64,000 nt of DNA from Ostrea edulis (GCF_947568905.1 NC_079166.1:31000001-31064000), one strand, 5' to 3'; positions 1,513-26,537 are shown, numbered from the stretch's first letter. The notes: a model not told the origin generated them from the letters alone. Numbers and translations are program-made.

Positions 1513-3099
1513 ATGGAGGCTGTTATAGAGAGCTTTATCACGCTGTGTAGAATTTTAGCCCTCCCGATTTTTCCAAAGGTTCGGCAATCAGGCTTCAACA
1601 ACAGTGCACACAGAGTAACCTTCTTGTTGTTTATGCACGTGTTATCCGGAATATTCGTTATCATCGGAATATACGCAGCAGGCCAAGCCACATCAGACGA
1701 GGCTAACATTAAGGGTTGGGTAGTAGTGATGGTCTTTGTAACAACTGGACTGATTTCGCTGGTCATTCTCCTCATCGCAGGGTGCACAAATAGACTAACT
1801 ACGCATGCGAGACGCAAAACCAAAATGTCCGATCCATCCTTGAAACTCCGAATAGGATTTCTGTGGGTGTTTGGATTAGCTGTAATGGCACATCTGTCCT
1901 TAAACTTCGCAACTTATATCGACTGCGTCCAATCTTATTCCTCCTTAAAGAGCGTCCATGTGACATTTTCGATGATGAGTAATACAATTTTATCACTCTT
2001 TCTCATAATTCAAATAGCCTTTATTTCGTATTATCAAAATGCATCCTTCACAAGGAGTCATGTGGTAAATTTTGCGAGTATTTTCATTCTAGCGGCGAAT
2101 TTTATCATCTGGTATAACGGTGCGTTGAGTAGTATCTATGTATTTGGACTGGTCGGAAACAATACAGTCCCACGTTATAGCAACGAGTCCTATTGCTTTA
2201 GAACATCTAAAATACAACACAACCTGACTAGAAAGATAACGCCATATTTAATTCCGTTTAGAATGGAGTTCTGTATTCTAGCATCCAGCTTTATCATAAC
2301 ATTCTGGAGGTGGCCGATGGACTATGTACGCGACGAAGGGAGTAGCACTGATTATCGTGTGTTCCGCCGAGACGAAGAGGGTAACACTGATTATCAAGTG
2401 CTTCACGGGGATGCTGAGGATGGCAATATGCCTTCTTCTGAGAAAAGAAATCACATACACGGACCCCATATTTTTGCAATAGTGTGTGGCATTGTCCTAA
2501 ACATGCCGACTTTTTTCTCAAAGCTTTTGCTATCGTTTGTCCCTGACGAGAAAAATCGTTTTGTTGTTTACATTGGCGAGTCTTTGAGTGCGGTTTGCAG
2601 CATCGCCATCGTTTACATATGCAGTTATCGTTTGAACAAGAATTTCAGCAACTCTTGGAGACACAGCAGACTAACGACCAATGAGTACATTCTAATTCTG
2701 ACGTCCTCTGGAATGGTGTCCTATTTTGTGATTGGTGTACTGACCGCTTTTTCATACCCCAAAAGGATGAAATTGTATGTCGGTTGCCGTTTCCTTGGTT
2801 TACTTGAAATATTTCTACAAACGTACTTCTTAATCAAAGTCAGAAGATACCACCTCAACGACAATCACTGTATTATCATTTCCTCGTGTGGAATTATTCT
2901 CATGTTAACCAATCTTATCTATTGGCTCCTACATTCTTACAGCCAGAATGCGTTTGTGGAAAGTCTGGAAATATTCTTCGTTGGACGCGAGAAATGGCTT
3001 TACATGGAAAGCATACTAGTTCCCTTACTGACATTTTACAGGTTTTTCTCCGGCATGAGTGCTTATTCCTTATATTACAAGTTTAAACCCGATCATTAA
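1513..3099 (+). CDS. OTOP: Otopetrin-like proton channel, type A copy 1 (528 aa, single coding exon)
   Basis: About 12 hydrophobic segments in two halves. OTOP-like motifs: LRIG..FGL, LIIQI, ANFIIW, PYLIPFRMEFCIL, EIFLQTYF, TNLIYW, PLLTFYRF. The ORF is uninterrupted. Confidence 0.9.
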   Translation: MEAVIESFITLCRILALPIFPKVRQSGFNNSAHRVTFLLFMHVLSGIFVIIGIYAAGQATSDEANIKGWVVVMVFVTTGLISLVILLIAGCTNRLTTHARRKTKMSDPSLKLRIGFLWVFGLAVMAHLSLNFATYIDCVQSYSSLKSVHVTFSMMSNTILSLFLIIQIAFISYYQNASFTRSHVVNFASIFILAANFIIWYNGALSSIYVFGLVGNNTVPRYSNESYCFRTSKIQHNLTRKITPYLIPFRMEFCILASSFIITFWRWPMDYVRDEGSSTDYRVFRRDEEGNTDYQVLHGDAEDGNMPSSEKRNHIHGPHIFAIVCGIVLNMPTFFSKLLLSFVPDEKNRFVVYIGESLSAVCSIAIVYICSYRLNKNFSNSWRHSRLTTNEYILILTSSGMVSYFVIGVLTAFSYPKRMKLYVGCRFLGLLEIFLQTYFLIKVRRYHLNDNHCIIISSCGIILMLTNLIYWLLHSYSQNAFVESLEIFFVGREKWLYMESILVPLLTFYRFFSGMSAYSLYYKFKPDH

Positions 3100-3186
3100 A
3101 TCGCATTGAAGCAGGATTTCTCGACCTCAATACACACCTGATATGAACTGTACTGTCCTACTACAGATAGGAGAACCAAAACATTG

Positions 3187-3295
3187 GACTCGTCACGTGA
3201 CCATTCAATGGACTTCACGTGTCTGACAATTCAACGGACCTCACGTGTCTGACCATTCAACGTACGTCACGTGTTTGACAATTCAATGGACGTTT
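3187..3295 (+). repeat. ~26-bp tandem repeat (about 4 units), each with CACGTG
   Basis: Units such as ccattcaatggacttcacgtgtctga start ~90 bp after the A1 stop. Confidence 0.85.
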
Positions 3296-3472
3296 CCATG
3301 CCTGTTCAGTAATACCTGAGAAATTTGTTTTTGAATTCACATCATTATTTTGTACTGTTTGGATATAGATGAACTCTTCACGGGTGAAGTTGATTGCATT
3401 TTGTGTACATAGAAAGTTTGTATAGCGTTTATATTATTGTATTCACAAATGTATATCCACGACTTTGTGATA

Positions 3473-3690
3473 CTGTGGAATCATTAGAATTCGTGGTGGC
3501 TCAATTTTCATGGAATTCGTGGGTACCCCTCACCCACGAATTTACATCCTCAACGAATAAAGAATCATAATTACATTCCAGAGTTATCTTTCTTACAAAT
3601 ATATAAATCCACGAAATGACATCCCCACGAACCCGTAAAAATTCAGCAATCCACGAAAATTGGCCCCCACGAATTTAAATGATTGTACAG
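3473..3690. mobile_element. Tc1/mariner-type MITE, TA TSD
   Basis: TA|ctgtggaatcatt...aatgattgtacag|TA imperfect TIRs. Paralogous copy at 19284-19501. Confidence 0.8.
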
Positions 3691-3752
3691 TACTCTGTGT
3701 GTTTATCTTTGTAATAACATACATTGAATATGAAAAGATGGTCTGCCATATC

Positions 3753-3760
<8 letters not shown>

Positions 3761-3815
<55 letters not shown>
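3761..3815 (+). repeat. (GA)n microsatellite
   Basis: Pure GA run; paralogous run at ~19638-19688. Confidence 0.98.
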
Positions 3816-3816
<1 letters not shown>

Positions 3817-4106
3817 ACTAATAATTTCCGTTATATAAATTATGAGATTGATTACTGTTTGTTATATTGATCTTTTCAGAGAGGGAGGAGGGGTCTTAAA
3901 GTAGAGTGAAATGAGATATGCCATTCTGATAAAGTGATATGAACTACGAAATATGCCTTATATTCAAATCCCTCCTCTACTGTGACTGTTAATCCCATGA
4001 ACTTTATACTTACTGTAACGGTCAGTGACTTGTTTTTCTCTGTTGGCAGCAGCACAATCATGAAGATGTTGAATAAACTGATCTCACAAATGAAAACAAA
4101 TTTTAA

Positions 4107-4353
4107 GGAGGTATGCTACACCAGAGAAATTTGATATGGATGAAAAGTGGAGGATATGTACAACATTATTTTCAAATTGAAAACTTACTTTACTTAGTCA
4201 AAAAATGAAGTTTTAGTAGAAAGCAATCTGAATTTTGTTTTAAAACCCCCGCTGGACTCGCACCCGCGAACTACATTTTAAAAGTCGACGGATTAACCTA
4301 CTCAGCTACTCAGCTAGACGATGATTTTTTGAATAAATAGACAAATATTGCTG
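4107..4353 (-). mobile_element. Partial TTAA-flanked (Kolobok-like) non-autonomous element with degenerate tRNA-like segment
   Basis: TTAA|ggaggtatgctacaccagagaaatttg is the reverse complement of the 3' end of the element at 26578-26895. Confidence 0.75.
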
Positions 4354-4356
4354 AGC

Positions 4357-4668
4357 CCCATATCCTGATCAGGTAAACAGAGTTATCCGCAGTCAAAATT
4401 AGTGTGCCAAGAACAGCTTAACAATCGGTATGAAACACGTCAGACAGCATTTGACCCAATGCAAGGTTGTATTGACGAACTAGATCGTTATAACGACCAT
4501 ACAATTTGCGAAATGCTGACTTCAATCGAGACTGTTGAAATCCCTGTACCATCAACTTGTTTGTCAGTAGCTTACCTCGATTTAAAAACTGACTATACGC
4601 AGAACAAGCTCTTGTATATCGAATCAGTTTAGATATATAAACACCATATGCAGGTGATAATGGAATTA
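4357..4668 (-). mobile_element. Penelope-like element fragment (RT thumb/3' region)
   Basis: Encodes SPAYGVYISKLIRYTRACS..QGFQQSRLKSAFRKLYGRYNDLV. Confidence 0.85.
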
Positions 4669-4738
4669 GCATGCAGACAGGCCCATAGAAAGCGGGAAGG
4701 GACGGGGACAGAAAACTTGTTCCAGCTCCCACATATTA

Positions 4739-5850
4739 ATTCTTCATAAATCGAGGCAGGTTACTGACAAACAAGTTGATGTCATATGGATTTCAACACT
4801 CCCGTTTAAAGTCAGCATTTCGCCAATTCTATGGTCGCTATAATGATCTAGTTTGCTAATACTACCTATTATTTGGTCAATTACTATCTGACGTGTTCAT
4901 ACCGATTATCAAGCCGTTCATGTCACACTGATTATGACTACGGATTACTCCGTTTACCGTATATACTCGCCTATAAGTCGAATTTTTGGGAGTCAAATTT
5001 TGGTCCAAAACTCAATGTCCGACTTATAGGCGCGTGCTAAGAAGATTGGTATTTTTCTGGGCGGCGAAATATAGTGTTTTAACAACTCTGACGATTATCA
5101 TGGACTACCACATGGATGATTATTGTTCACAAATATCTAGACATATTGTATTGTTTGTGTATTTTAAAATCATGTATAAAGTACAAGTATTACATATTTT
5201 TATCTAGTTAAAAGTTATTTACATATCGATATCGGTAAAATTGAATTACGAACCCGATTTAATATTGAAATATTCATATGTATACCGTCTGAAATATATT
5301 TCATAACAGATTGAATATTGTTAACAGATAATTTAGATCATCATTCTTGACTCTTAAAAACTTTATTGTTGATACAATGAATTATACCGGACTCCCACAA
5401 TAACAGTTTGCACGAGGCGCGTGTCACTAAGTAAACACGGTGTCAGGTATTGGTAATTAGGAGACCATAATATCTTAGGTAACAAGGGATCATTGCTCAT
5501 TATAGAACAAGGGTTGCGTTTAAACCCCAATTAGATATGACTTGGATATTGAGCAGATCATAATTATTAATTTCTCGAAATATTTGTTGAAACATAGGTA
5601 AAAACACTAGAGCATTGACTTGAAATTGTCAACCGAATCTGACAAAAATTTGTACCGACTTATAAGCGGGTCAATGGCAAATTCCTACAAAATAACCTTA
5701 AAAAATACAACCGACTTATAGGCGAGTATATACGGTACCCGATCAAGATGTAGGGTGTGACAGGTCGACAGGGGTCCTTCCTCCTCTTAGGCACCTAATC
5801 TCACCTCTGGTATATCCAGGGGCCCGTGTTTGTACAACTCTCTATTTTCC
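4739..5850 (+). mobile_element. Penelope-like 3' fragment interrupted by a MITE
   Basis: Family sequence resumes at 5738 after the MITE. The uninterrupted paralog is at ~20460-20853. Confidence 0.8.
4957..5735. mobile_element. Tc1/mariner (pogo-like) MITE, 24-bp perfect TIR, TA TSD
   Basis: TA|ccgtatatactcgcctataagtcg ... cgacttataggcgagtatatacgg|TA. The empty site is present in unit 2 (~20628). Confidence 0.92.
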
Positions 5851-6756
5851 TTGGATGACTATATTACTTTTTAATCCTACAGTAATATTTTGAAATTCAT
5901 TAATTTATTGAGGGCTTTTCCAACCACTTTGTTACACCCATTTATAGCTTTTTTTGTAATTTGAATGTTGCTTATGTTCAAAGAGTTTTTCTGCGATCAT
6001 TGACTTTGACTAAATTGGAATGTTAGAAAACATTTAAACGCCTTGATAATATCGGTAATAGGAAAATAAAATGCTACAATATTTTTTTCATAATTAATCA
6101 TATAATCCATCCGTCCTTGTCGGCAAAATCCGCAGAAATTTTATTCGAGGATTCTAATCTAACCACTTTCCCCATCCGTCTCTGCATGTACTGCAAAAGT
6201 ACATGTTTAGGTCGTATGAAAAGTGCTCGTCATATTGTTACCAGACAGCAATGGCGGAATCTCCTATAGTAGGCTTTATCCTTAGGCACCACAGAGGAAG
6301 ATTCATAAAATGGATGGGGGCAATCATACCTGTCTTAATCACTTTGACGATAAAGAAAATACAAAACTTCTAAATAACGTCACGTTTGCATTGAAAACTG
6401 TTACGTGATTAGTGTGTAAACCACTCTGTATCCGAGAGTTCACTGTAAATCGAAAAACAAGGTGTTGTGTCAAAATCTTCAATTTTCATCCTCTGAAAAA
6501 AACAATAGGCATATGAAGCTGCGATGTTTTGCGTCTTTTATCATCATTTCGGAAATATATTCACACTTTCCTTTGTTGAAGTTTTCAATTTTCCATAACA
6601 AACACGTCATAATGCCATAAAATCTCTTTCTGACGATGGAACACCAAATTAACATAGATACATCATAGTAGATCTCTCTCCCATTTTTCTTCGCTTCCTC
6701 CCACTATCTCTCATGTCATATCATATAGAATATCAAATATAATGATTCTTAACGAA

Positions 6757-6808
<52 letters not shown>

Positions 6809-6809
<1 letters not shown>

Positions 6810-7011
6810 CTTATACGGTACCAATTTTGATGCACCAGATGCGCATTTCGGCAAATGATGTCTCTTCAGTGATGCTCAACCAAAATTTTTGAAATCCGAA
6901 ATAACAATAAACTTGTAAGAGCTCTTTTAGGGGAAAACAGAGTGCCAAAAAGTGGAGTCAAATTTGTCTAAGGATAAGAGCTATGCATGAGGGAGATAAT
7001 CCTTAATTTTG

Positions 7012-7013
<2 letters not shown>
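6809..7013 (-). mobile_element. Short (TA)n-embedded PLE-derived or retrozyme-like element carrying a hammerhead ribozyme
   Basis: Flanked on both sides by (TA)n. A truncated paralog lacking the ribozyme part is at ~22030-22160. Confidence 0.7.
6832..6875 (-). ncRNA. Minimal type I hammerhead ribozyme
   Basis: Minus strand reads gcauca-CUGAAGA-gaca(ucauu)ugcc-GAAA-ugcgcau-C^-uggugc. Stem I has 6 bp, stem II one mismatch, and stem III is the palindrome AUGCGCAU with an AUC cleavage triplet. Confidence 0.8.
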
Positions 7014-7055
<42 letters not shown>

Positions 7056-7097
7056 TCCAGTCACATCCAAACTTGTTCTTCAATTGAATACTGTATA

Positions 7098-7568
7098 CAT
7101 ATATATTATTACTACAGTAACTTGATCCGATGAGTTGGATCACGTCGAGTTGACAGGCGCGGATCATCAGATCACACGAGACGCGAAGCGTCGAGTTTGA
7201 TCTGATGATCCGCGCCTGTCAACGAGACGTGATCCAACTCTTCGTATCAAGTTACTGTAGTAATGATAAATTTATTATATATCCCTTTGTGCATTTTAAA
7301 TCCACATTTATAAGATAATAAATATAATCCAAAATTATCAAAAACACAGACATATCATGAAATTATGTTTTGTGTACGCGGTTTCGTTTGTGACGCGGTC
7401 AATATTTTCCACAAATAACGTTGCGTTGATGCATTGTGACCTCATTGTGACGGCATCAGTTTCAGAGGATACTGATACGGAATCAGAAAACCACAGTGTG
7501 GTGATCCGGAAAACCGGATCACACGCTATGAAATCCACAGTATCAACAAAGATACATTGATGGGTATA
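7098..7568. mobile_element. Unclassified foldback element with ~157-nt hairpin, inserted in a MITE
   Basis: Near-perfect inverted repeat at 7108-7264. It is absent from the intact MITE paralog at 22381-22571. Confidence 0.75.
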
Positions 7569-8239
7569 TAATAAAGATAAATATTCGCCCCCTTTTAATT
7601 TCGCCAATTTCGCCAATCGTTGACTGTTGGCGAACTTAAGACCGGGCGAAAATGGGTTTTTTTCCTTTTTTTTTTTTTTTTTTTTTTACACAACTGTGTC
7701 TGGACGATTTAAAACGAAGCAAAACTTCTGCAAGTGTAGAAATAACCCTGTATATAGTATCTATATAAACTAACTGATCAACAGACTACAATTGAACGGT
7801 AAGAAATGTTATGGCATATCGATGGATAGTTTTGAACACCTGCAATAAATTTTGACAGACAATTACCCCTCTTTGTTAAACATATCAAAAAGGATGTCTT
7901 CAAATCATACAATATGGCAATACTTGATATAAAAACATTTTGTTTTGTCGAGTAAATGTGATATTAAGCATAATTGTGTCAGAATTAAGCAAATGTTTCG
8001 TAGACATAAAATCATAGAAGGGTTTTAGTTGAGAAGTGTGTTACTAAATAATTACAGATAAAAGAGGATTTAAGCTTATAAAACTGTATGTAATATCCTC
8101 ACTGTGTTCTAAAGAGTAATCTTTCTTTCTATCTCACTCATTCACGAATGTTTTTCACAATAGGGGCATGCCATTGTACATGCATATCAAAATTAAATAG
8201 TAATTATAATTTCAACAATGTTAAATAAAACAATGACAA

Positions 8240-8385
8240 GTCACGGTAACCTAGTGATTAAAGCGCTGATTGTGCAACGGGGGGGGGGGGGGTATGGTTC
8301 GATTCAAACTTCGTCAAACCTAAGGCATTTAACATACATGTAGGTAGTGATTGTTACATTACCGAACTTTTAACATTTAAAATGA
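8240..8385 (+). mobile_element. Degenerate tRNA-derived SINE 5' part
   Basis: A-box-like and ggttcgattc B-box-like motifs followed by aaacctaag..gtagtgattg, related to the SINE at 35537-35868. Paralog at ~23085-23230. Confidence 0.55.
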
Positions 8386-8411
8386 AAACAGGACAAACAC
8401 AGAACATGTGA

Positions 8412-8686
8412 GCATACCAGAGGTGGAACCGGCTGCCTAGGAGGAGTAAGCATTACCTGTTGACCAGTCAAACCCGCCATTATCCCTATATATTGATCAA
8501 GTAAATAGAGCAATCCGTTGTCAAAATCAAATGTAAAGAACAGTCTTACAATCGGTATGAAACACGTCAGTCAGCACTCGACGTAATGACAAGTTTTTGT
8601 AAATTAGATCATTATGTACAGGACTTTTAACGACAATAGAATCTAGAAAACACTGGCTTTAAACGATATTCTTGAAACCCCTGTAA
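8412..8686 (-). mobile_element. Penelope-like 3' fragment
   Basis: Matches the family 3' sequence (accagaggtgg..ggtatgaaacacgtcag). Not present in unit 2. Confidence 0.75.
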
Positions 8687-9287
8687 CCTGTTTGGGGCCC
8701 AAACTCTGTGGTACCATAGAGATAGAAAGGGGTCTAACTCTGACCCAGATTTAAAAAAACTACCCACTTGCTTCAAATGCCTAAAAAATCAGAAACTAGG
8801 TCTGGTATGCGTAATCTGCCGGTCTCCTTACATAGATTAATGTTTTAACCACTTGCATGCAAAATTTCTTAAAACAACAGAGATATATGTCATCGTTCTT
8901 TCGTTTAACCTTTTTATTTTTACTGGGACATTTACCGGACCAGGTCACCGGGTGGTTTCTAGCCTATGGCAGGAGCGAAATTCAGACTGATGTGGAAGAT
9001 TTTAGACCTGTCAATTAAAATATCACATTAAATATACGCTACTTACTTCCTCATACTTTAATAAAGTCCTCTATGTTTGCTGTATCTGGATCGCTTATTT
9101 TACAAAACGTCAACTCCTGCCTCTAACTGCCATTTTGATAAAGACCCGAAATACCTAAAACTTTAAGGAAGGGAAAATGGGTAAGAATAATCAAAATGAA
9201 ATAAAATTAATAAAAACAAAAAATTAAGAAAGCCAAAAAATAATTCTCAATTTCCTTCTCTAGGTGCAATATCACAATATCACCACG

Positions 9288-9893
9288 GAGTCGTCCACTT
9301 TTGCTTCATAATTAAATATTTTATTGAAAGTAGATATTAACAGCAAACTGACAACTCAATTCTATGACAAACGGAATTATTTCAGCTTCTCTATCGTCAA
9401 CTTCCCATATTTATGTAGCAATATTCCATTATCACCTGCATATGGTGTTTATACCTCTCAACTGATTCGATATGCAAATGCTTGTTCTGCGTATAGTCAG
9501 TTTTCAAATCGTAGCAAGCTACGGACAAACAAGTTGATGGTACAGGGGTTTCAACAGTCTCGATTAAAGTCAGCCTTTTGCAAATTGTATGGTCGTTATA
9601 ACGATCTAGTTCGTCAATACAACCTATCATTTGGTCAAATGCTGTCTGACGTGTTTCATACCGATTGTTAGGCCGTTCGTGGCACACTGATTTTGATTAC
9701 GGATTTCTCCGTTTAACTGATCAGGATATATGGCTCACGGCGGGTGTGAACGGTCGACGGGGGATGCTTGCTCCTCCTAGGCACCTGATCCTACCTCTGG
9801 TGTGTCCAGGGGTCCGTGTTTGCCCAACTATCTATTTTGTATTGCTTATAGGAGTTTTGATATTGATCACTGTTCGTTATCTTCGCCTTTCAT
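9288..9893 (+). mobile_element. Penelope-like element, 5'-truncated, with complete 3' end
   Basis: ORF 9324-9671 (FYDKR..FSIVNFPYLCSNIPLSPAYGVY..DVFHTDC*) is followed by the family 3' UTR ending cttcgcctttcat. Confidence 0.88.
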
Positions 9894-10029
9894 GCATAAT
9901 TCAACATACTATTTTGTAATTTCAAATAATATTGGCTTTCCTTCAATGGTTTAAAGATAGTAACATTTTCAATTATTCAAAGATAGGTGCAACATATGAA
10001 TTATATAAAATAATTCATTTAAAGAGAGG

Positions 10030-10822: not shown

Positions 10823-10959
10823 TTATTATAACGAATATAGAATTGGCGAAATGTTGACTTTAAACGAGATTGTTTAAGCACCTGTAGAATCAACTAAATT
10901 GTCTTATTTGAAAATTTATCATATGCAGAACATGTCTCTAAACACCACGTGCAAGTGAT

Positions 10960-11230: not shown

Positions 11231-11412
11231 CGTGTAGAAGCATTCGTGCCCATGGGTAGAATTCCATCAAGTACATTCTTATCCCACAATACATGTATTC
11301 CTATTGATAATGGCTGTGTTAATCTTAAGCTTTCCTCTCTATATGTCTATTTCTCTTTTGGTTTGCTCTCTATTCAGTTGAATTCATCATTAATTGTAAC
11401 ACGAGTGCAACA

Positions 11413-11950: not shown

Positions 11951-12013
11951 TAGAGGTCATTGGAATCGCTCATTACGTTTCTTACAAATCAATTCTGATA
12001 TCTGGAGGTTGTT

Positions 12014-17319: not shown

Positions 17320-18906
17320 ATGGAGGCTGTTATAGAGAGCTTTATCACGCTGTGTAGAATTTTAGCCCTCCCGATCTTTCCAAAGGTTCGGCAATCAGGC
17401 TTCAACAACAGTGCACACAGAGTAACCTTCTTGTTGTTTATGCACGTGTTATCCGGAATATTCGTTATCATCGGAATATGCGCAGCAGGCCAAGCCTCAT
17501 CATATGAGTCCAACATTAAGGGTTGGATGGTAGTGATGGTCTTTGTAACAATTGGACTGATTTCGCTGGTCATTCTCATCATCGCAGGGTGCACATATAG
17601 GCTAATTACACATGCGAGACGCAAAACCAAAATGTCCGATCCATCCTTGAAACTCCGAATAGGATTTCTGTGGGTGTTTGGATTAGCTGTAATGGCACAT
17701 GTATCCTTAAACTTCGCAACTTATATTGACTGCGTCCAATCTTATTCCTCCTTAAAGGGCGTCCATGTGACATTTTCGATGATGAGTAATACAATCTTAT
17801 CACTCTTTCTCATAATTCAAATAGGCTTTATTTCGTATTATCAACATGCATCCTTCACAAGGAGTCATGTGGTAAATTTTGCGAGTATTTTCATTCTAGC
17901 GGCGAATTTTATCATCTGGTATAACAGTGCGTTGAGTAATATCTATGTATTTGGAATGGTCGGGAACAATACAGTCCCACGGTATAGCAACGAGTCCTAT
18001 TGCTTTAGAACATCTAAAATACAACACAACCTGACTAGAAAGATAACGCCATATTTATTTCCGTTTAGAATGGAGTTCTGTATTCTAGCATCCAGCTTTA
18101 TCATAACATTCTGGAGGTGGCCGATGGACTATGCACGCGACGAAGGGAGTAGCACTGATTATCGTGTGCTCCGCCGAGACGAAGGGGGTAACACTGATTA
18201 TCAAGTGCTTCACGGGGATGCTGAGGATGGCAATATGCCTTCTTTTGAGAAAAGAAATCACATACACGGACCCCATATTTTTGCAATAGTGTGTGGCATT
18301 GTCCTAAACATGCCGACTTTTTTCTCAAAGCTTTTGCTATCGTTTGTCCCTGACGAGAAAAATCGTTTTGTTGTTTACATTGGCGAGTCTTTGAGTGCGG
18401 TTTGCAGCATCGCCATCGTTTACATATGCAGTTATTCCTTGAACAAGAATTTCAGCAACTCTTGGAGACACAGCAGACTAACGACCAATGAGTACATTCT
18501 AATTCTGACGTCCTCTGGAATGGTGTCCTATTTTGTGATTGGTGTACTGACCGCTTTTTCATACCCAAAAAGGATGAAGATGTATGCCTGTTGCCGTTTC
18601 CTTGGTTTACTAGAAATATTTCTACAAACGTACTTCTTAATCAAAGTCAGAAGATACCACCTCAACGACAATCACTGTATTCTCATTTCCTCGTGTGGAA
18701 TTATTCTCATGTTAACCAATCTTATTTACTGGCTCCTAAATTCTTACAGCCAGAATGTTTTTGTGGAAAGCCTGGAAATGATCTTCATTGGACGCGAGAA
18801 ATGGCTTTACATAGAAAGCATACTAGTTCCCTTACTGACATTTTACAGGTTTTTCTCCGGCATGAGTGCTTATTCCTTATATTACAAGTTTAAACCCGAT
18901 CGTTAA
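17320..18906 (+). CDS. OTOP: Otopetrin-like proton channel, type A copy 2 (528 aa)
   Basis: Intact ORF with about 33 aa differences from A1 (hand count) and the same OTOP-like motifs. Confidence 0.9.
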   Translation: MEAVIESFITLCRILALPIFPKVRQSGFNNSAHRVTFLLFMHVLSGIFVIIGICAAGQASSYESNIKGWMVVMVFVTIGLISLVILIIAGCTYRLITHARRKTKMSDPSLKLRIGFLWVFGLAVMAHVSLNFATYIDCVQSYSSLKGVHVTFSMMSNTILSLFLIIQIGFISYYQHASFTRSHVVNFASIFILAANFIIWYNSALSNIYVFGMVGNNTVPRYSNESYCFRTSKIQHNLTRKITPYLFPFRMEFCILASSFIITFWRWPMDYARDEGSSTDYRVLRRDEGGNTDYQVLHGDAEDGNMPSFEKRNHIHGPHIFAIVCGIVLNMPTFFSKLLLSFVPDEKNRFVVYIGESLSAVCSIAIVYICSYSLNKNFSNSWRHSRLTTNEYILILTSSGMVSYFVIGVLTAFSYPKRMKMYACCRFLGLLEIFLQTYFLIKVRRYHLNDNHCILISSCGIILMLTNLIYWLLNSYSQNVFVESLEMIFIGREKWLYIESILVPLLTFYRFFSGMSAYSLYYKFKPDR

Positions 18907-18974
18907 ATCGCATTGAAGCAGGATTTCTCGACCTCAATACACACCTGATATGAACTGTACTGTCCTACTACAGA

Positions 18975-19105
18975 TAGGAGAACCAAAACATTGGACTCGT
19001 CACGTGTCTGAAAATTAAACGGTCGTCGAGTGTTTGACCATTCAACGGACGTCACGTTTCTGACAATTCATTGGAACTTACGTGTTTGACAATTCAATGG
19101 ACGTT
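18975..19105 (+). repeat. Degenerate paralog of the 26-bp repeat downstream of A2
   Basis: Same periodicity; only the first CACGTG is intact. Confidence 0.8.
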
Positions 19106-19283
19106 TTCATGCCTGTTCAGTAATACCTGAGAAATTTGTTTTTGAATTCACATCATTATTTTGTGCTGTTTGGATATAGATGAACTCTTCGCGGGTGAAG
19201 TTGATTGCATTTTGTGTACATAGAAAGTTTGTATAGCGTTTATATTATTGTATTCACAAATGTATATCCACGACTTTGTGATA

Positions 19284-19501
19284 CTGTGGAATCATTAGAA
19301 TTCGTGGTGGCTCAATTTTCGTGGAATTCGTGGGTACTCCTCACCCACGAATTTACATCCTCAACGAATAAAGAATCATAATTACATTCCAGAGTTATCT
19401 TTCTTAAAAATATATAAATCCACGAAATGACGTCCCCACGAACCCGTAAAAATTCAGGAATTTACGAAAATTGGCCCCCACGAATTTAAATGATTCTACA
19501 A
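19284..19501. mobile_element. Tc1/mariner-type MITE (paralog of 3473-3690)
   Basis: Same TIRs and same position relative to the A gene. Confidence 0.8.
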
Positions 19502-19636
19502 TACTCTGTGTGTTTATTTGTGTAATGACATAAATTGAATATGAAAAGATGGTCTGCCATATCATCAAACTTGTATATGTGAAAATTAGTCAAATTTAGT
19601 ACATGAAGCAATAAGGAAGAATGTTGGGAACAACGT

Positions 19637-19691
<55 letters not shown>

Positions 19692-19900
19692 TCAAAGTAG
19701 AGTGAAAGTAGAAATGCCATTCTGATAGTGATTTGAACTTCGAAATATGCCTTATATTCAAATCCCTCCTCTACTGTGACTGTTAATCCCATGAACTTTG
19801 TACTTACTCTAACGGTCAGTGACTTGTTTTTCTCTGTTGGCAACAGCACAATCATGAAGATGTTAAATAAATTGATCTCACAAATGAAAACAATTTTTAA

Positions 19901-20148
19901 GGAGGTATGGTACACCAGAGAAATTTGATATGGATGAAAAGTGGAGGATATGTACAACAATATTTTGAAATTGAAAACTTACTTCACTTAGTCAAAAAAT
20001 GAAGTTTTAGTAGAAAGCAATCTGAAATTTTTTTCAAACCCCTGCTGGACTCAAACTCGCGAACTACATTTTAAAAGTCGACGGGTTAACTTACTGAGCT
20101 ACTCAGCTAGGCTATAATTTTTTTAATAAATAGGCAAATATTGCTGAT
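19901..20148 (-). mobile_element. Partial Kolobok-like element (paralog of 4107-4353)
   Basis: TTAA|ggaggtatggtacaccagagaaatttg terminus. Confidence 0.75.
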
Positions 20149-20459
20149 ATTTACGAAAAGCCAGAAGGCTCATTCGAGATGCGATATTCAAAATACGAGA
20201 TTCGAAATTCAAAATACGAGATTCGAATTTCGAAATTCAAAATCCAAATTAACCAATCAAAATGTAAGTCACAATAGATTAAAGGGTACATACATATAAA
20301 CTTAAAATTTGACAGAAAGTTTATTCTTCTAATATGTTTACCAAACAAAGAAACATTTCTTCTAAAACTATAAATGTTTTGATGTATGCTTAGCATGCAG
20401 ACAGGCCCATAGAAAATGGGAAGGGACGGGGACAGAAAACTTGTTCCAGCTCCCACATA

Positions 20460-20853
20460 TTAATTCTGCATAAATCGAGGCAGGCTACTGACAAACAAGT
20501 TGATGTCATATGGGTTTCAACAGTCTCGTTTAAAGTCAGCATTTCGCCAATTCTATGGTCGCTATAATGATCTAGTTTGCTAATACTACCTCTTATTTGG
20601 TCAATTACTATCTGACGTGTTCATACCGATTCAAGCCGTTCATGGCACACTGATTTTGACTACGGATTACTCCGTTTACCCGATCAAGATGTAGGACTCA
20701 CGGCGGGTGTGACAGGTCGACAGGGGTCCTTACTCCTCCTAGGCACCTAATCCCACCTCTGGTATATCCAGGGGCCCTTGTTTGTCCAACTCTCTATTTT
20801 CCATTGCCTGTTGGAATTATGAGATTGATCACTGTTTGTTATATTCACCTTCC
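20460..20853 (+). mobile_element. Penelope-like 3' fragment
   Basis: Family thumb and 3' UTR ending ttcaccttccat. Confidence 0.8.
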
Positions 20854-21557
20854 ATGACAGTATTATTTTTAATCCTACAGTAATATTTTGAAATTCGTTA
20901 ATTTATTGAGGACATTTCCAACCACTTTGTTACATCGATTTATAGCTTTTTTGTAATTTGAATGTTGCCTATGTTCAAAGAATTTTTCTGTGATCAATGA
21001 CTTTGACTAAATTGGAATGTTGGAAAACATTTAAACGTCTTAATAATATCGGTAATAGCAAAACAAAATGCTACAATAATTTTTCATAATTAATCATACA
21101 ATCCATCGTCCTTGTCGGCAAAATCCGAGGATACTAATCTAACCACTTCGCCCATCCATATCTGCATGTACTGCAAAAGTACATGTTTAGGTCGTATGAA
21201 ATGTGGTTATATTTAAACAAGGAAATTTATTGAGTTCCATCACATGTTTAGGAGACTAATTAGCTCTATTTATAACACTGAATTTGTTCAAGTGATATTT
21301 TGTTAAGTGATTTTCCAGGTTTGCCTTTTTCCGTTTCATTTTTATGCTGAAACAATTGCTGATAAGAGATAAATGACGATGTATAATTAAAAGAAGTGCT
21401 CGCCATATTGTTACCAGACAGCTATGGCAGAATCTCCCATAGTAGGCTTTATCCTTAGGTACCAGAGAGGAAGATTCATAAAATGGAGGGGGAGGGCAAT
21501 CATAGTTGTCTTTAATCACTTTGACAATAAAGAAAATACAAAAGTTTCACATGTGAA

Positions 21558-21607
<50 letters not shown>

Positions 21608-21639
21608 CACTAAAATGACCAACGACACGAACAACCAGA

Positions 21640-21680
21640 TTGTCAAATTTTCGGGACGACCCGTCCCTTCTTCAGGACAA
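21640..21680 (-). ncRNA. Inverted identical copy of the hammerhead ribozyme
   Basis: Exact reverse complement of 21862-21902. Confidence 0.72.
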
Positions 21681-21861
21681 ACGAAATGTCCTAATTCGCT
21701 CCACTTTTAACATTGATTGGTAAGCCTAAAAACCAAAAAACATGTAGTCTGCGTTGTAATTACGTTTGTAGATTAGTGTAGTTGTAGTGCTAGATGTATT
21801 TATATGTAGTTTTTGTTATTATTCTCTGTTGATATTGGCCACATTATGTAATTCTTTTCGT

Positions 21862-21902
21862 TTGTCCTGAAGAAGGGACGGGTCGTCCCGAAAATTTGAC
21901 AA
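21862..21902 (+). ncRNA. Minimal hammerhead ribozyme (PLE type)
   Basis: uuguc-CUGAAGA-a-gggacg(ggu)cguccc-GAAA-auu-U^-gacaa. Stem I has 5 bp, stem II 6 bp, and stem III is the palindrome AAUU. Confidence 0.72.
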
Positions 21903-22280
21903 TCTGGTTGTTCGTGTCGTTGGTCATTTTAGTGCCTTGTATAATTTTTTGTATTTGACCTAGCTTGTATCCATGTAGTGGATCCGACACTTTGAGTTAT
22001 CGCGTGTTGTTGAAACTTTAGTGCTTATATATATATCCGAAATAACAATAAACTTGTGAGAGCTATTTTAGGGGGAAAGAGAGAGTAAAAAAGTGGAGTA
22101 AAATTCGTCTAAGGATAAGAGCTATGCATGAGGAAGATAATCCTTAATTTTTAAATATATATATATTGAATATTGTTCGAGAATATTTCACTCATATTGA
22201 AACGTCACCACTGCCGGGGAAGAGCTGAAAAATTTAGTAAGGGGGTACTGAGGACCTATTCTAACCCGAATCCCCACGGG

Positions 22281-22345
<65 letters not shown>

Positions 22346-22380
22346 TCCAGTCACATCCAAACTTGTTTTTCAATTGAATA

Positions 22381-22571
22381 CTGTATACAGAGAAATATTC
22401 GCCACGTTTTATTTTCGCCCATTTCACCAATCGTTGTCTGTGGGTGAATTTAAAACCGGGCGAGACTGGGTTTTTTCTTTTATCTTTTTTTAACACATCT
22501 GTCTCTAGACGAATTTAAAACGCAGCAAAACTGTCCGCAAGTGTTGAAAGGCGAAAATAACCTTGTATATA
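22381..22571. mobile_element. Tc1/mariner-type MITE, TA TSD
   Basis: TA|ctgtatacagag...ccttgtatatag|TA. The paralog at ~7091-7750 is interrupted. Confidence 0.7.
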
Positions 22572-23641
22572 GTATCTATATAAACTAACTGCTAAAACAA
22601 ACTACAATAGCCGTGTTTCGACCGGTAGGAAATGTTGTGGCATATCGATGGATGGTTTTGAACACCTGCAATAAATTTTGACAGACAATTACCCCTCTTT
22701 GGTAAACATATCAATAAAGATGTGTTCAAATCATACAATATGGCAATACTTGATATAAAACATTTCGTTTTGTCGAGTAAATATGAAATTATGCATAATT
22801 GTATCAGAATTAAGCAAATGTTTCGTAGACATAAAATCATAGAAGGGTTTTAGTTGAGAAATGTGTTACTAAAGAATTACAGATAAAAGAGGGTTTAAGC
22901 TTATAAAACTGTGTGTAATACCCTCACTGTGTTGTACCACAGTCTTTATGTAGAGTAATCTTTCTTTCTATCTCACTCATTCACGAATGTTTTTTCACAA
23001 TAGGGGTATGCCATTGTACATGCATATCAAAATTAAGTAGTAATTATAATTTCAACAATGTTAGATAAAAACAATGACAAGTCACGGTAGCCAAGTGATT
23101 AAAGCACTGATTTTGCAACCGGGGGGGGGGAGTAACGGTTCGATTCAAACTTCGTCAAACTTAAGGCATTTAACATACATGTAGGTAGTGATTGCTCCAT
23201 TACCGAACTTTTAACATTTAAAATCAAAACAGGACAAACATGTTCTCACCACTTGCATGCAAAATGTCTTAACATAACAGAGATATACGTCATCGTTCTT
23301 TCGTTTAAACCTATTTATTTATACTAGGACATTTACCGGGTGGTTTCTTGCCTATGGCAGCAGCGAAATTCAAACAAGTGTGGATGATTTCAGACCTTTC
23401 AATTAAAATATCATATCAAATATACGCTACTTACTTCCTCATACTTTAATAAAGTTCTCTATGTTCGCCGTATCTGGGTGGCTTATTTTATAAAACATCA
23501 AATCCTGCCTCTAACTGCTATTTTGATAAACGCACTAAAGACCCGAAATACCTAAAACTTTAAGGAAAGCAAAATGGGTAAGAACAATCAAAATCAAATA
23601 AAATAAATAACAAAAAATTAAGAAAGCTAAAATATAATAAT

Positions 23642-23994
23642 AAGTTGATGGTGTAAGGTTTCAACAGTTTCGTTAAAAGTCAGCATTTCGCAAATTTTAT
23701 GGTCGTTATAACAATCTAGTTTGCCAATATAACCTATCAAATGCTGTCTGACGTGTTTCATAACGATTGTTAGGCCGTTATTGGCACACTAATTTTGAAT
23801 ACGGATAACTCTGTTTACCTGATCGAAATATCGGGCACACGGCATGTGTGACCGGTCGACTTGGGATGCTTACTCCTTCTAGACACTTGATCCTACCTCT
23901 GGTATATCCAGGGGTCCGTGTTTGCCCAACTCTCTATTTTATATTGCTTATAGGAGTGAGGAAATTGGTTACTGTTCGTTATCTTCACCTTTCA
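23642..23994 (+). mobile_element. Penelope-like 3' fragment (paralog of ~10470-10822)
   Basis: Family 3' UTR ending cttcacctttcat. Confidence 0.8.
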
Positions 23995-24989
23995 TTATTA
24001 TAAGAAATATAGAATTGGCGAAATGTTGATTTTAAACGAGATCGTTGAAGCACCTGTAGCATCAACTAAATTGTCTTATTTGAAAATTTATCATATGCAG
24101 AACATGTCTCTAAACACCACGTGCAAGTGATGATGGAATATTCCTACATAAATATGGAAAATTGATGTGGAGAAGTCATCCCGTTTGTCATAAAGTAAAA
24201 TTCTAGTTTGATGCTACAATTCAAATTCAATGAAATATCAAAACAGCCAAATACGAAGTAGATATGAAAGCCTCTGTCTTGGTTGTTTTTTTTTTCGAGG
24301 TCACTGTGATATATCGAATGAAAATGAATATTGTTTATATATATAACATCGTCGATATACCCATGCATTTAAATATCAAGTTGAAGCCACAACCAAATAT
24401 GTTTTCGTGTAGAAGCATTCGTGCCCATGGGTAGAATTCCATCAGGTACATCCTTATCCCACAGTACATGTATTCCTATTGATAATAGCTGTGTTAATCT
24501 TACGCTTTCCTCTCTATATGTCTATTTCTCTTTCCAGTTGAATTCATCATTAATTGTAACACGAGTGTAACAATTCTAAGGATGAGCTAGAGAGAATTTT
24601 AACCCTTGATTACAAAAAATAAAAGATTGTGAAAACACCCATTAATCACCCATTTACAATCGAATTGCAACAACACGGCAAATAGAATTTCAGAGAGCTA
24701 TTTAATATCTGCAAGGAAAGTTCCTCCTTGAAAATTGTTCCTGGAAGTAAGAGAACTTTCTCCATTTTTAAGCACTTCCTGTTGTTAAATATCATTCATG
24801 ATTAAACGCCCTTTCGTTTTTGGAGCACTTCCTCTTATATTAATGTTTGCAGCATATCCAATATACTACCCTGATTAGGAATTTAATGAAGAGGTAAACG
24901 ATCAAGCACTAACGAAATACTTCCTCTAGAGGTCACTGGAATCGCTCATTACGTTTCTTACAAATCAATTCTGATATCTGGAGGTTGTT

Positions 24990-26537
24990 ATGGAGAGTTG
25001 TAAGACACTGTGTAGAATTTTAGCCCTCCCGATCTTTCCAAATGTTCCGCAATCAGGCTTCAACAATAGTGGAGAGAGAATTTCATTCTTATTCTTTTTA
25101 CACGTAATATCCGGGCTATTTGTCATCAACGGGGTATTTGCAGCCGAACAAGCAACATCAGAAGAATCCAACATTAAGAATTGGGTGGTAGTGACGGTCT
25201 TTGTAACAATTGGACTGATTTCGCTGGTTATTCTTCTCATTGCAGGTTGCAGAAATACGCTGCATACAAATAGAATACCAGAAACCAAAATGTCCGATCC
25301 ATCCTTGAATCTTCGAATAGGATTTCTGTGGGTGTTTGGATTAGTGGTGATGATACATGTGTCCTTGAACTTTGCAACTTATATTGACTGCATCCAATCT
25401 TATTCCTTAAGAGGTGTCCATGTGACATTTTTGTTGACGAGTAACATAATCTTATTACTCTTCCTCATCATTCAAATTACCTTTGTTTCGTATTTCCAAC
25501 ATACATGTACTTCTTTCACAAGAGGTTATATTATCAACTTTGCCAGTATGTTCGTTCTAGTGGCCAACTTTGTCATTTGGTATAGTGTAGTGGTTAGTAA
25601 AAGCACATCATTAGGAATGATGAAGAACGATGCGGAATCAAACCAAAGCAATGAGACCTATTGCTTTCTAACATCTAAGATACAGCAGAAACTATCTTTA
25701 AATATGACGCCGTATTTATTTCCATCTAGAATGGAGTTCTGTATTCTAGCATCCAGCTTTATCATAACATTGAGGAGGTGGCCGATGGACTATGTACGAA
25801 ATGAAGGGAGTTACACTGACTATCAAGTGCTTCACGAAAATATTGATGATCGTAATGTTCCTTCCCCTGAGAAAAGAAATCACATAAACGGACCTCATAT
25901 ATTTGCAACAGTGTGTGGGTTTGTCATTAATATGCCAACTTTTTTCTCAGCGATATTGCTAGTATTTGTCTCTGACTGGAACCAAGAAGCCCTTCTTCTT
26001 ACTATTTACACCGGTGAGTCTTTGAGTGCGGTTTGCAGCATCGCCATCGTTTACATATGCAGTTATTGTTTGAACAAGAATTTCAGTAACTCTTGGAGAC
26101 ACAGCAAACTAACGACCAATGAGTACATTCTAATTCTGACATCCTCTGGAATGGTGACCTATTTTACTATTGGTATACTGACCAATTTTTCATACCCCCA
26201 AAACATGAAGATGTACGCTTGTTGTCGTTTCCTTGGTTTACTAGAAATATTTCTACAGACGTACTTCTTCATCAGAATTAGGCGGTACAATCTCAATGGC
26301 AACCACTCCATTCTCATTTCCTCGTGTGGAATTATTCTCATGTTAACCAATCTGATTTACTGGCTCCTAAATTCTTACAAGCAGAATGCTTTTGCGGAAA
26401 GTAGAGAAATATTCCTTGTTGAACGCGAGAAATGGCTCTACATAGAAAACATACTAGTTCCTTTACTGACATTTTACAGGTTTTTCTCGGCCATGAGTGC
26501 TTATTCCTTATATTGTAAGTTTAAACCGAATCGTTAA
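24990..26537 (+). CDS. OTOP: Otopetrin-like proton channel, type B copy 2 (515 aa)
   Basis: Intact single-exon ORF with motifs PYLFPSRMEFCIL, EIFLQTYF, TNLIYW and PLLTFYRF. Confidence 0.9.
   Translation: MESCKTLCRILALPIFPNVPQSGFNNSGERISFLFFLHVISGLFVINGVFAAEQATSEESNIKNWVVVTVFVTIGLISLVILLIAGCRNTLHTNRIPETKMSDPSLNLRIGFLWVFGLVVMIHVSLNFATYIDCIQSYSLRGVHVTFLLTSNIILLLFLIIQITFVSYFQHTCTSFTRGYIINFASMFVLVANFVIWYSVVVSKSTSLGMMKNDAESNQSNETYCFLTSKIQQKLSLNMTPYLFPSRMEFCILASSFIITLRRWPMDYVRNEGSYTDYQVLHENIDDRNVPSPEKRNHINGPHIFATVCGFVINMPTFFSAILLVFVSDWNQEALLLTIYTGESLSAVCSIAIVYICSYCLNKNFSNSWRHSKLTTNEYILILTSSGMVTYFTIGILTNFSYPQNMKMYACCRFLGLLEIFLQTYFFIRIRRYNLNGNHSILISSCGIILMLTNLIYWLLNSYKQNAFAESREIFLVEREKWLYIENILVPLLTFYRFFSAMSAYSLYCKFKPNR

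What the first reader, a model, noticed from the sequence alone, without database searches (positions are those of the whole stretch)
1513..26537. Tandem array of four divergent single-exon otopetrin-like channel genes in two subtypes
Seen: four homologous ~12-TM ORFs in A-B-A-B order on one strand, with at least three intact. Established: OTOP proteins are dimeric proton-selective channels. They act in sour/acid sensing and otoconia formation, and a sea-urchin otopetrin has been linked to acid efflux in calcifying cells. Inference: this is a lineage-specific, still-expanding OTOP subfamily in a probable shell-forming mollusc. It could serve calcification pH control, chemosensing or haemocyte function, and the array may extend left of the window.
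Basis: partly seen in the sequence, partly recalled or inferred. Interest (0 to 1): 0.85.

Follow-up and report, generated by a model that had tools for sequence, protein, structure and literature searches.

The report
Oyster otopetrin-like gene array lacking key histidine
This stretch of the European flat oyster genome holds a recently duplicated pair-of-pairs of intronless otopetrin-family membrane protein genes (three intact, one broken). They have the proton-channel fold but lack a histidine that known otopetrin channels need, so the gene array is real while the "proton channel" label is unproven.

Summary
Four homologous ORFs lie on the + strand in A-B-A-B order: A1 1513-3099, B1 12014-13553, A2 17320-18906, B2 24990-26537. 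A1, A2 and B2 are intact. B1 is a pseudogene with a 2-bp deletion and a premature TGA.

The order comes from a young tandem duplication of a ~16-kb unit (93-95.5% DNA identity, dS 0.06-0.09). That unit already carried two older paralogues (70% aa identity, dS ~0.4).

The window is Ostrea edulis, OX387706.1:31,000,001-31,064,000.

Family membership is solid:
- Pfam Otopetrin hits on the copies.
- Profile E 2.6e-39 to mouse OTOP2.
- AlphaFold model (pLDDT 86) superposes on all solved OTOP structures at Z 25-34; the next fold scores Z 9.7.

The copies belong to a well-supported clade that includes other oysters (Magallana, Saccostrea). This clade keeps the TM6 glutamate, the FYR motif and the C-barrel Gln-Asn-Tyr triad. 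It replaces the TM12 histidine with Phe (FYRFF), and the N-barrel Tyr with Phe. Mutating that histidine abolishes current in vertebrate OTOPs.

Intronless, tandem OTOP-like genes are common in oysters, so the array itself is ordinary. The histidine-less clade is the interesting part.

Expression and function are untested. A role in calcification is speculation.

The scan's note s1-301882, made on this same window, had already flagged the residue replacements.

The parts
1513..3099 (+). A1: intact 528-aa otopetrin-like CDS in a single ORF
   Evidence: ORF. Pfam PF03189 56.2 bits, E 3.6e-15. AF2 model pLDDT 86, pTM 0.87. VIA-align Z 34.2 to mOTOP2.
12014..13553 (+). B1: pseudogene of the B type. 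The reading frame is broken into 12014-12348, 12349-12713 and 12720-13553.
   Evidence: DNA alignment to B2 is 94% identical, with a 2-bp and a 6-bp deletion. TGA at B2 codon 237. The pieces still hit Pfam Otopetrin at 28.2 and 41.1 bits.
12348..12349 (+). B1 lesion 1: 2 bp missing between these bases relative to B2 25325-25326, giving a frameshift
   Evidence: An independent contig spans the site without a gap (X3 record 18).
12714..12716 (+). B1 lesion 2: in-frame TGA where B2 has TTA (Leu237)
17320..18906 (+). A2: intact 528-aa CDS, 94% aa identical to A1
   Evidence: Pfam PF03189 50.4 bits.
24990..26537 (+). B2: intact 515-aa CDS, 70% identical to A1. It is the only copy on record as a called gene (P0001).
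   Evidence: The C-terminal half hits PF03189 at 30.8 bits. The full length is dropped by HMMER filters.
1..15809 (+). Duplication unit 1 (A1 + B1 + shared intergenic blocks). Its left edge is cut by the window.
   Evidence: Self-BLAST collinear blocks.
15810..31957 (+). Duplication unit 2 (A2 + B2), with insertions downstream of B2
   Evidence: Self-BLAST. ORF 28278-28835 has a weak zf-RVT hit, suggesting a retroelement fragment in the inserted part.
3034..3048 (+). Codons for A1 residues 508-512, FYRFF. The FYR motif is kept; the TM12 His of canonical OTOPs (FYRMH) is replaced by Phe512.
   Evidence: Gap-free alignment to mOTOP2 P543...F547-Y548-R549-M550-H551. Same result with zebrafish OTOP1 and XtOTOP3 H669.
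2254..2271 (+). Codons for A1 residues 248-253, P-F-R-M-E-F. The TM6 kink Pro248 and the buried Glu252 are kept; the N-barrel triad Tyr is replaced by Phe253.
   Evidence: Alignments to mOTOP2 P246/E250 and XtOTOP3 E321/Y322. Column counts.

Best explanation
Shown:
- This is a birth-and-death gene array in Ostrea edulis.
- An older duplication produced two paralogues, A and B (70% aa identity, dS ~0.4).
- Much later the whole ~16-kb A-B unit duplicated in tandem (dS 0.056 for A1/A2, 0.089 for B1/B2). This gives the order A1-B1-A2-B2.
- B1 has since been inactivated.
- The genes have intronless coding sequences. They belong to a clade of the otopetrin (PF03189) family whose identifiable members are oysters.
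- The predicted protein has the OTOP architecture. Twelve transmembrane helices form two six-helix barrels, joined by a disordered TM6-TM7 cytoplasmic linker.
- The polar residues lining both barrels are retained. So are the buried TM6 glutamate (E252), the acidic TM9 residue (E391), the E432/R510 pair and the FYR motif.
- The TM12 histidine, proposed as the cytoplasmic proton acceptor from the TM6 glutamate, is Phe in all four copies. It is Phe, Tyr, Leu or Thr throughout the clade.

Inferred:
- The barrel-lining residues are invariant across paralogues that are only 44-54% identical. The recent copies have dN/dS of 0.35-0.5. So the intact copies are most likely functional, dimeric OTOP-type membrane proteins that still move protons.
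- They cannot use the canonical Glu-to-His relay at the inter-barrel interface. I therefore expect conduction through the intact C-barrel, or a water wire past E252/E391. I also expect altered pH gating or desensitisation.
- Their physiological role in the oyster is unknown.
For: Array and duplication history.

Organism and coordinates: P0025 is named Ostrea edulis and lies in the same assembly, GCA_947568905.1. B2 lies at OX387706.1:31,024,990.

Family membership:
- Pfam hits.
- 54 of 80 full-length relatives carry PF03189, best E 5.8e-114.
- Profile vs PDB: mOTOP2 E 2.6e-39, XtOTOP3 1.8e-34, zebrafish OTOP1 1.8e-32.
- Foldseek: the top 12 hits are all OTOP structures, E 2.8e-8 to 5e-5, then a jump to 0.045.
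- VIA-align: Z 24.7-34.2, 392 of 400 residues of mOTOP2 aligned at 3.3 A; the next fold scores Z 9.7.

Residue map.

Invariant positions in the 15-sequence clade alignment include N196, E252, F253, Q436, N467, W471, P504, Y509 and R510.

Clade: 17 rows, SH-aLRT 100, none with His.

Selection: dN/dS 0.51 (A1-A2), 0.35-0.39 (A-B), 0.62 (B1-B2, one partner dead).

Why the His matters: H669A/Q abolish XtOTOP3 current and E321Q does too (PMC6483595). Glu-to-His proton transfer model (PMC11343839). E267/H574 'highly conserved across all Otopetrins' and needed for function (PMC12549899). Three candidate water wires including the C domain (bioRxiv 10.1101/542308).
Against: - No expression evidence for any copy. 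The RNA-like run X19 is from another organism and has zero depth on the coding parts.
- A1 and A2 are not on record as called genes, and B2's exact protein is seen only on the genome record.
- dN/dS of 0.5 between A1 and A2 is high for a channel and is compatible with relaxed constraint.
- In tested OTOPs, loss of the TM12 His abolishes current. A non-conducting protein is therefore a serious possibility.
- The N-barrel triad is also incomplete (Tyr to Phe).
- The structure is a prediction. Dimerisation was not modelled.
Confidence: 0.55

Rival explanations
1. The proteins keep the OTOP fold but no longer conduct protons. They might act as modulatory or heterodimer partners of His-bearing OTOPs, as sensors, or as carriers of something else. 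Alternatively the young copies are drifting towards the fate of B1.
For: TM12 His is replaced by Phe in all copies, and the N-barrel Tyr by Phe. His-to-Ala/Gln mutants of XtOTOP3 give no current (PMC6483595). dN/dS is 0.5 for A1-A2, and one of four copies is already dead. A1 and A2 are not annotated in the collection.
Against: Barrel-lining Q/N/Y/E/R positions and the TM6 Glu are invariant across clade members that are only 44-54% identical. That is hard to explain without a transport-related function. The clade includes proteins from Ostrea, Magallana and Saccostrea. Three ORFs of about 1.55 kb remain open.
Confidence: 0.3
2. The two units are uncollapsed haplotypes placed in tandem by the assembler, so the locus really holds one A and one B gene.
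For: Bivalve genomes are highly heterozygous. The units are only 4.5-7% diverged. No contig or read bridges the repeat-filled junction at 15.4-16.7 kb.
Against: - Both units lie on the same side of the only N run (33509-33658), with no gap between them.
- They differ by several kb of insertions and by an inactivated versus an intact B gene.
- Unit-1-specific (B1) and unit-2-specific (A2) sequence are both present at >=99% identity and similar depth in DNA runs of different studies: X1 16-27 vs 22-34, X3 about 120-310 vs 200-350.
- In raw reads (X24) B1 has about 1.4x depth from 1.38 Gb sampled. That is roughly the full diploid expectation for a ~1-Gb genome rather than half. The genome size is from my own knowledge, and the depth is low, so this is rough.
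Confidence: 0.05
3. The intronless copies are processed retrocopies scattered by retrotransposition rather than by segmental duplication.
For: The coding sequences have no introns. Retroelement fragments lie nearby (zf-RVT hit).
Against: Homology between copies extends 1.5 kb upstream and several kb downstream at the same identity as the CDS, and covers the whole 16-kb unit in order. Intronless CDS is shared by other oyster OTOP-like genes examined: Saccostrea P0012 and P0028 plus its neighbour, and O. edulis P0025. It is therefore an old family trait, not a sign of recent retroposition.
Confidence: 0.03

Closest known systems
Vertebrate otopetrins OTOP1/2/3 (structures 6NF4, 6NF6, 6O84, 8UG6)
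   Same: Same 12-TM double-barrel fold (Z 30-34, rmsd 3.1-3.9 A over about 350-400 residues). Shared motifs: TM6 P-x3-E, FYR, C-barrel Gln-Asn-Tyr, the TM10 Glu (as zebrafish E429) paired with the FYR Arg, and the conserved TM11 N-x3-W.
   Different: Only 13-17% identity. The TM12 His (mOTOP2 H551, DrOTOP1 H574, XtOTOP3 H669) is Phe. The N-barrel Tyr is Phe. The TM9 Asp is Glu. The loops are shorter (528 aa vs 560-690). The CDS is intronless.
C. elegans OTOP8 (8UG4/8UG5), the invertebrate OTOP with a solved structure and a Glu325-to-His567 proton transfer model
   Same: Same fold (Z 24.7-28.6). Profile E 1e-26. The TM6 Glu and the TM12 kink Pro are conserved.
   Different: CeOTOP8 has His567, which receives the proton. 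The oyster proteins have Phe at that position, so that relay cannot operate.
Sea urchin Otop2l, an alkaline-activated proton channel of calcifying primary mesenchyme cells (PMC13000164)
   Same: An invertebrate otopetrin-family member in a marine calcifier.
   Different: No expression or localisation data exist for the oyster genes. The analogy is untested.
Other oyster OTOP-like genes (O. edulis LOC125656719 = P0025; Saccostrea cucullata LOC134253668 = P0028 with a 547-aa neighbour)
   Same: Intronless CDS of about 510-550 aa with Pfam Otopetrin. The P0028 locus holds two same-strand genes 4.7 kb apart.
   Different: Those two proteins keep the TM12 His (signatures ending in H). They are only 21-27% identical to A1.

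Membership tests
Otopetrin domain family (Pfam PF03189), by homology | Significant match to the Otopetrin HMM above the gathering score | tested here: met
   A1 56.2 bits, A2 50.4 bits, B1 pieces 28.2 and 41.1 bits, B2 C-terminal half 30.8 bits; cut-off 27.8. Full-length B2 gives no hit. This is probably a filter artefact, because B2 is 70% identical to A1.
Otopetrin domain family (Pfam PF03189), by homology | 12 TM helices forming two structurally similar six-helix barrels (OTOP fold) | tested here: met
   The AF2 model has pLDDT 86 and 12 long helices in a 6+6 layout with a disordered 266-316 linker. Z is 24.7-34.2 to all 12 OTOP entries, and the next fold scores 9.7. Foldseek agrees.
Otopetrin domain family (Pfam PF03189), by homology | FYR motif in TM12 | tested here: met
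   F508-Y509-R510 in A1. Y509 and R510 are invariant in the clade.
Proton-conducting OTOP channels (functional class) | Buried TM6 glutamate (XtOTOP3 E321, mOTOP2 E250, DrOTOP1 E267) one turn after a kink proline | tested here: met
   P248 and E252 in A1, same in A2, B1 and B2. E is invariant in the clade and present in 70 of 80 relatives.
Proton-conducting OTOP channels (functional class) | TM12 histidine two residues after the FYR Arg (XtOTOP3 H669, mOTOP2 H551, CeOTOP8 H567, DrOTOP1 H574), required for current | tested here: not met
   Phe512 in A1 and A2, and the same FYRFF in B1 and B2. No member of the 17-row clade has His. Only 24 of 80 relatives do.
Proton-conducting OTOP channels (functional class) | Gln-Asn-Tyr constriction triad in the C barrel | tested here: met
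   Q436, N467 and Y509 are all invariant in the clade. The Gln assignment rests on the conserved TM10 Q-T motif aligned to mOTOP2 Q418 and XtOTOP3 Q558. The paper numbers this Gln 585, a discrepancy I could not resolve.
Proton-conducting OTOP channels (functional class) | Gln-Asn/Asp-Tyr constriction triad in the N barrel | tested here: inconclusive
   Q167 and N196 are kept, but the Tyr (XtOTOP3 Y322) is F253. Phe occurs there in 45 of 80 relatives. N-barrel mutants are the better tolerated ones in XtOTOP3 (PMC6483595).
Proton-conducting OTOP channels (functional class) | Homodimer assembly | not tested
   Only the monomer was modelled.
Proton-conducting OTOP channels (functional class) | Proton-selective, Zn-sensitive current | not testable with these tools
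   Needs electrophysiology.

The most novel reading that the evidence does not exclude
Oysters maintain a whole clade of otopetrins that conduct protons, or carry out a new transport or sensing function, without the TM12 histidine. If they do conduct protons, the Glu-to-His relay proposed from CeOTOP8 and mOTOP2 is not universal, and proton passage through a barrel (or a Glu-only interface wire) is sufficient. Among 80 relatives sampled here, only 24 keep the His. Histidine-less otopetrins may therefore be the majority in invertebrate expansions.
Probability: 0.3. Interest if true: 0.65.

Novelty: new variant of a known kind. Interest (0 to 1): 0.4.

Why it matters
The otopetrin conduction pathway is still debated: two barrels versus the inter-barrel interface. 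A naturally conserved clade offers a ready-made test of the Glu-to-His relay model, because it keeps every barrel-lining polar residue and the buried glutamate but has a hydrophobic residue in place of the 'essential' histidine.

For oyster biology, the locus shows ongoing birth and death of OTOP-like genes. Two intact copies (A1, A2) appear in no protein collection searched. Any link to shell formation or acid-base control is a hypothesis only.

Tried and rejected
It belongs to another organism and covers only interspersed repeats, so it says nothing about expression.
- Exact-sequence look-ups of A1 and A2 found nothing. A look-up of P0002 also found nothing.
- Logan contigs for the relatives P0161 and P0166 have the same ends in several runs but no poly(A) tail. 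They cannot be called transcripts.
- NCBIfam gave only noise.
- Full-length B2 gives no Pfam hit even at E 10. I treat this as a filter artefact, because its C-terminal half and its pseudogene twin do hit.
- Rfam at gathering thresholds finds nothing in the whole window.
- Literature searches found no paper on oyster or mollusc otopetrins, or on histidine-less otopetrins, in the held library.
- The nematode OTOP paper has no residue-level information.
- Haplotig and retrocopy readings were considered and judged unlikely (see rivals).
- Leftward extension of the array could not be examined. No tool reaches beyond window base 1, and the scan's notes hold nothing on it.


Full report
**What is there.** ORF listing finds four long + strand ORFs at the reported places: 1513-3099 (A1, 528 aa), 12720-13553 (the C-terminal part of B1), 17320-18906 (A2, 528 aa) and 24990-26537 (B2, 515 aa).
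- A1 and A2 are 94% identical.
- A1 and B2 are 70% identical.
- The B1 fragment and B2 are 87% identical.
- tblastn with A1 and B2 finds these four loci only. Nothing related lies in 27-64 kb.

**B1 is a pseudogene.** Aligned to B2 (94% DNA identity), it has three lesions:
- it lacks 2 bp at 12348/12349, which shifts the frame at B2 codons 112-113;
- it lacks 6 bp at 12528, an in-frame loss;
- it has TGA at 12714-12716 where B2 has TTA.

A contig from an independent DNA run covers 12229-12405 without a gap. No insertions or deletions were reported in three DNA runs. The frameshift is therefore real.

**How the array arose.** A self-comparison shows window 1-3754 matching 15810-19565 at 95.5%. 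It also shows 11608-13594 matching 24601-26576 at 93%. Collinear blocks of 85-92% lie between these and continue to 15375 / 31957. They are interrupted by insertions and by a very abundant ~0.3-0.6-kb interspersed repeat.

So a ~16-kb unit that already held an A and a B gene was duplicated in tandem. Synonymous divergence is 0.056 (A1-A2) and 0.089 (B1-B2), against 0.39-0.44 between A and B. dN/dS is 0.51, 0.62 and 0.35-0.39 respectively. The tree gives (B2,(A1,A2)) with full support.

Homology between the units begins at window base 1. Whether a further unit lies to the left cannot be decided.

**Is the tandem duplication an assembly artefact?** Probably not.
- The two units are contiguous, and both lie left of the single N run (33509-33658).
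- They differ by kilobases of insertions and by a dead versus a live B gene.
- Unit-1-specific and unit-2-specific sequences are both present, at >=99% identity and comparable depth, in DNA runs from different studies.
- Raw-read depth on B1 is about 1.4x from 1.38 Gb sampled. That is about the full diploid expectation for a ~1-Gb genome. The genome size is my own knowledge and the depth is low, so this is only indicative.
- No read or contig bridges the repeat-rich junction at 15.4-16.7 kb. Long reads are needed for proof.

**Organism.** B2 is on record at GCA_947568905.1, OX387706.1:31,024,990-31,026,537. A relative in the same assembly is named by NCBI as an Ostrea edulis protein. The window is therefore O. 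edulis OX387706.1:31,000,001-31,064,000. Sequencing runs holding the stretch include 'oyster metagenome' samples.

**Family.**
- Pfam Otopetrin is hit by A1 (56 bits), A2 (50 bits), both B1 pieces (28 and 41 bits) and the C-terminal half of B2 (31 bits). The cut-off is 27.8.
- Full-length B2 gives no hit. I take this to be a filter artefact.
- A profile of A1 and its closest relatives finds 451 cluster representatives at E <= 1e-3. Of the 80 full-length sequences I aligned, 54 carry PF03189.
- A profile of that alignment matches mouse OTOP2 at E 2.6e-39, Xenopus OTOP3 at 1.8e-34, chicken OTOP3 at 4.9e-33, zebrafish OTOP1 at 1.8e-32 and C. elegans OTOP8 at 1e-26.
- The AlphaFold model of A1 has pLDDT 86 and pTM 0.87. 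It shows twelve long helices in a 6+6 arrangement, with a disordered linker at 266-316.
- In Foldseek the top twelve PDB matches are all OTOP entries, followed by a jump from E 5e-5 to 0.045.
- VIA-align gives Z 24.7-34.2, with 392 of 400 residues of mOTOP2 aligned at 3.3 A. The next fold scores Z 9.7.
- The language-model atlas also places the protein among Otopetrin clusters.

**Functional residues.** The alignments are gap-free around the conserved motifs, so the mapping is secure.

*Kept:*
- TM6 kink Pro248 and buried Glu252 (mOTOP2 P246/E250; XtOTOP3 E321).
- N-barrel Gln167 and Asn196 (XtOTOP3 Q232/D262).
- An acidic TM9 residue, Glu391, at or next to the XtOTOP3 D509 position.
- TM10 Glu432 (zebrafish E429 position) and Gln436.
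- TM11 Asn467 and Trp471 (XtOTOP3 N623).
- TM12 Pro504 and the FYR motif, F508-Y509-R510 (XtOTOP3 Y666/R667).

*Replaced:*
- The N-barrel Tyr (XtOTOP3 Y322) is Phe253.
- The TM12 His (mOTOP2 H551, XtOTOP3 H669, CeOTOP8 H567, zebrafish H574) is Phe512. All four copies read FYRFF.

According to the literature, His669Ala/Gln and Glu321Gln abolish XtOTOP3 current (PMC6483595). The Glu and His are described as absolutely or highly conserved and as the proton donor-acceptor pair at the inter-barrel interface (PMC11343839, PMC12549899). Molecular dynamics also allows water wires in each barrel (bioRxiv 10.1101/542308).

**The clade.** In a maximum-likelihood tree of the 80 sequences, the window proteins fall in a 17-row clade with SH-aLRT 100. 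Its named members are a Magallana gigas protein (P0017) and two Saccostrea cucullata proteins (P0007, P0012). None of the 17 has His at the TM12 position; they have F, Y, L or T. Within the 15 closest sequences, which are 44-54% identical to A1, the barrel-lining residues listed above are invariant or nearly so. Across all 80 relatives only 24 have His. This sample is biased towards relatives of the query.

**Gene structure and context.**
- Each ORF has an in-frame stop 3-5 codons upstream of its ATG. Each aligns end to end with homologues of similar length.
- The Saccostrea orthologue-like gene P0012 is one uninterrupted 1587-bp ORF.
- The more distant, His-bearing O. edulis P0025 and Saccostrea P0028 are also uninterrupted. 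P0028 has a second intronless Otopetrin gene 4.7 kb downstream on the same strand.
- Intronless OTOP-like genes, and at least one other tandem pair, therefore occur elsewhere in oysters. The architecture of this array is not unusual.
- Differences between A and B concentrate in loops (60% identity vs 74% in helices), TM1 and TM5. They include a 13-residue repeat in the cytoplasmic linker of A.

**Function.**
- Shown: homology, fold, conserved polar network, loss of the His, moderate purifying selection, and turnover.
- Not shown: transcription, localisation, dimerisation, and conductance.
- My best reading (about 45-55%) is a working OTOP-type proton pathway that does not depend on the TM12 His. 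I base this on the strong conservation of the barrel and glutamate residues across the clade.
- The main rival (about 30%) is a non-conducting or otherwise repurposed protein.
- Calcification, chemosensory or haemocyte roles are possible, but nothing here supports one over another.
- The sea urchin Otop2l precedent is real (PMC13000164), but it is an analogy only.

**Verdict.** The array is real, and its assignment to the otopetrin family is secure. It is a new, partly unannotated set of members of a known family. The clade-wide loss of a residue held to be essential makes it a variant worth an electrophysiological test.

Noticed in passing
window 4352-4958, 9290-9894, 10355-10823, 15380-15979, 20471-20856, 23639-23995, 33665-34212: A ~0.3-0.6-kb interspersed repeat occurs in both orientations, with copies 75-92% alike, throughout the array. 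Raw-read depth on the copy at 15401-15600 is about 600x, against about 1.5x on unique sequence. It is therefore a very high-copy element (SINE- or MITE-like?). It fills the junction between the two duplication units.
   Followed up: partly
window 121-815, 15930-16628 and, inverted, 32454-33169: A ~700-bp element sits just upstream of each A gene. A third, inverted copy (about 81% identity) lies beyond the end of unit 2, next to the N run. It may be a repeat rather than part of the gene's promoter.
   Followed up: no
window 48514-49938 and 50022-50321: A 24-bp satellite of about 60 copies (90% matches) is followed by a 22/42-bp satellite. These account for the strong positive GC skew at 48-53 kb and for spurious long ORFs there.
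   Followed up: partly
window 55363-55921, 56272-56687, 57842-58329, 45364-45553: Further tandem arrays have periods of 10/20/136 bp (ACCTCTACAC-type), 30 bp, 38/73 bp, and a perfect 38-bp x5 repeat.
   Followed up: no
window 6809-7013 and 21605-22026: Other first-stage notes (s1-302232, s1-302101) report hammerhead ribozymes here. A scan of the whole window against Rfam 15 at gathering thresholds returned no match of any family. I did not try the permissive E-value mode.
   Followed up: partly
window 28278-28835: A 185-aa ORF has a weak zf-RVT hit (E 0.0014, below the Pfam cut-off). It is probably a retroelement fragment, sitting in sequence inserted downstream of B2 in unit 2 only.
   Followed up: no
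L001 and L014 (Saccostrea cucullata JAVVLV010023867.1): Two Saccostrea members of the same clade (P0012, P0007) lie about 66 kb apart on one contig. Both fall inside the span of a gene model with a 241-aa Fibrinogen_C product that runs over more than 20 kb of each locus. Either they are nested in a huge intron or the model is dubious.
   Followed up: no
window 24990-26537: Full-length B2 gives no Pfam hit even at E 10. Its C-terminal half alone scores 30.8 bits, and its broken twin B1 scores in both pieces. This is a reminder that HMMER's filters can hide a true family member.
   Followed up: yes
alignment A2, columns of A1 C138 and C228: Two cysteines are present in >=90% of 80 family members. 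One is in the TM3-TM4 loop, the other in the TM5-TM6 loop. This suggests a conserved extracellular disulfide. The TM5-TM6 loop with two N-x-S/T sites is the most conserved loop in the oyster clade.
   Followed up: no
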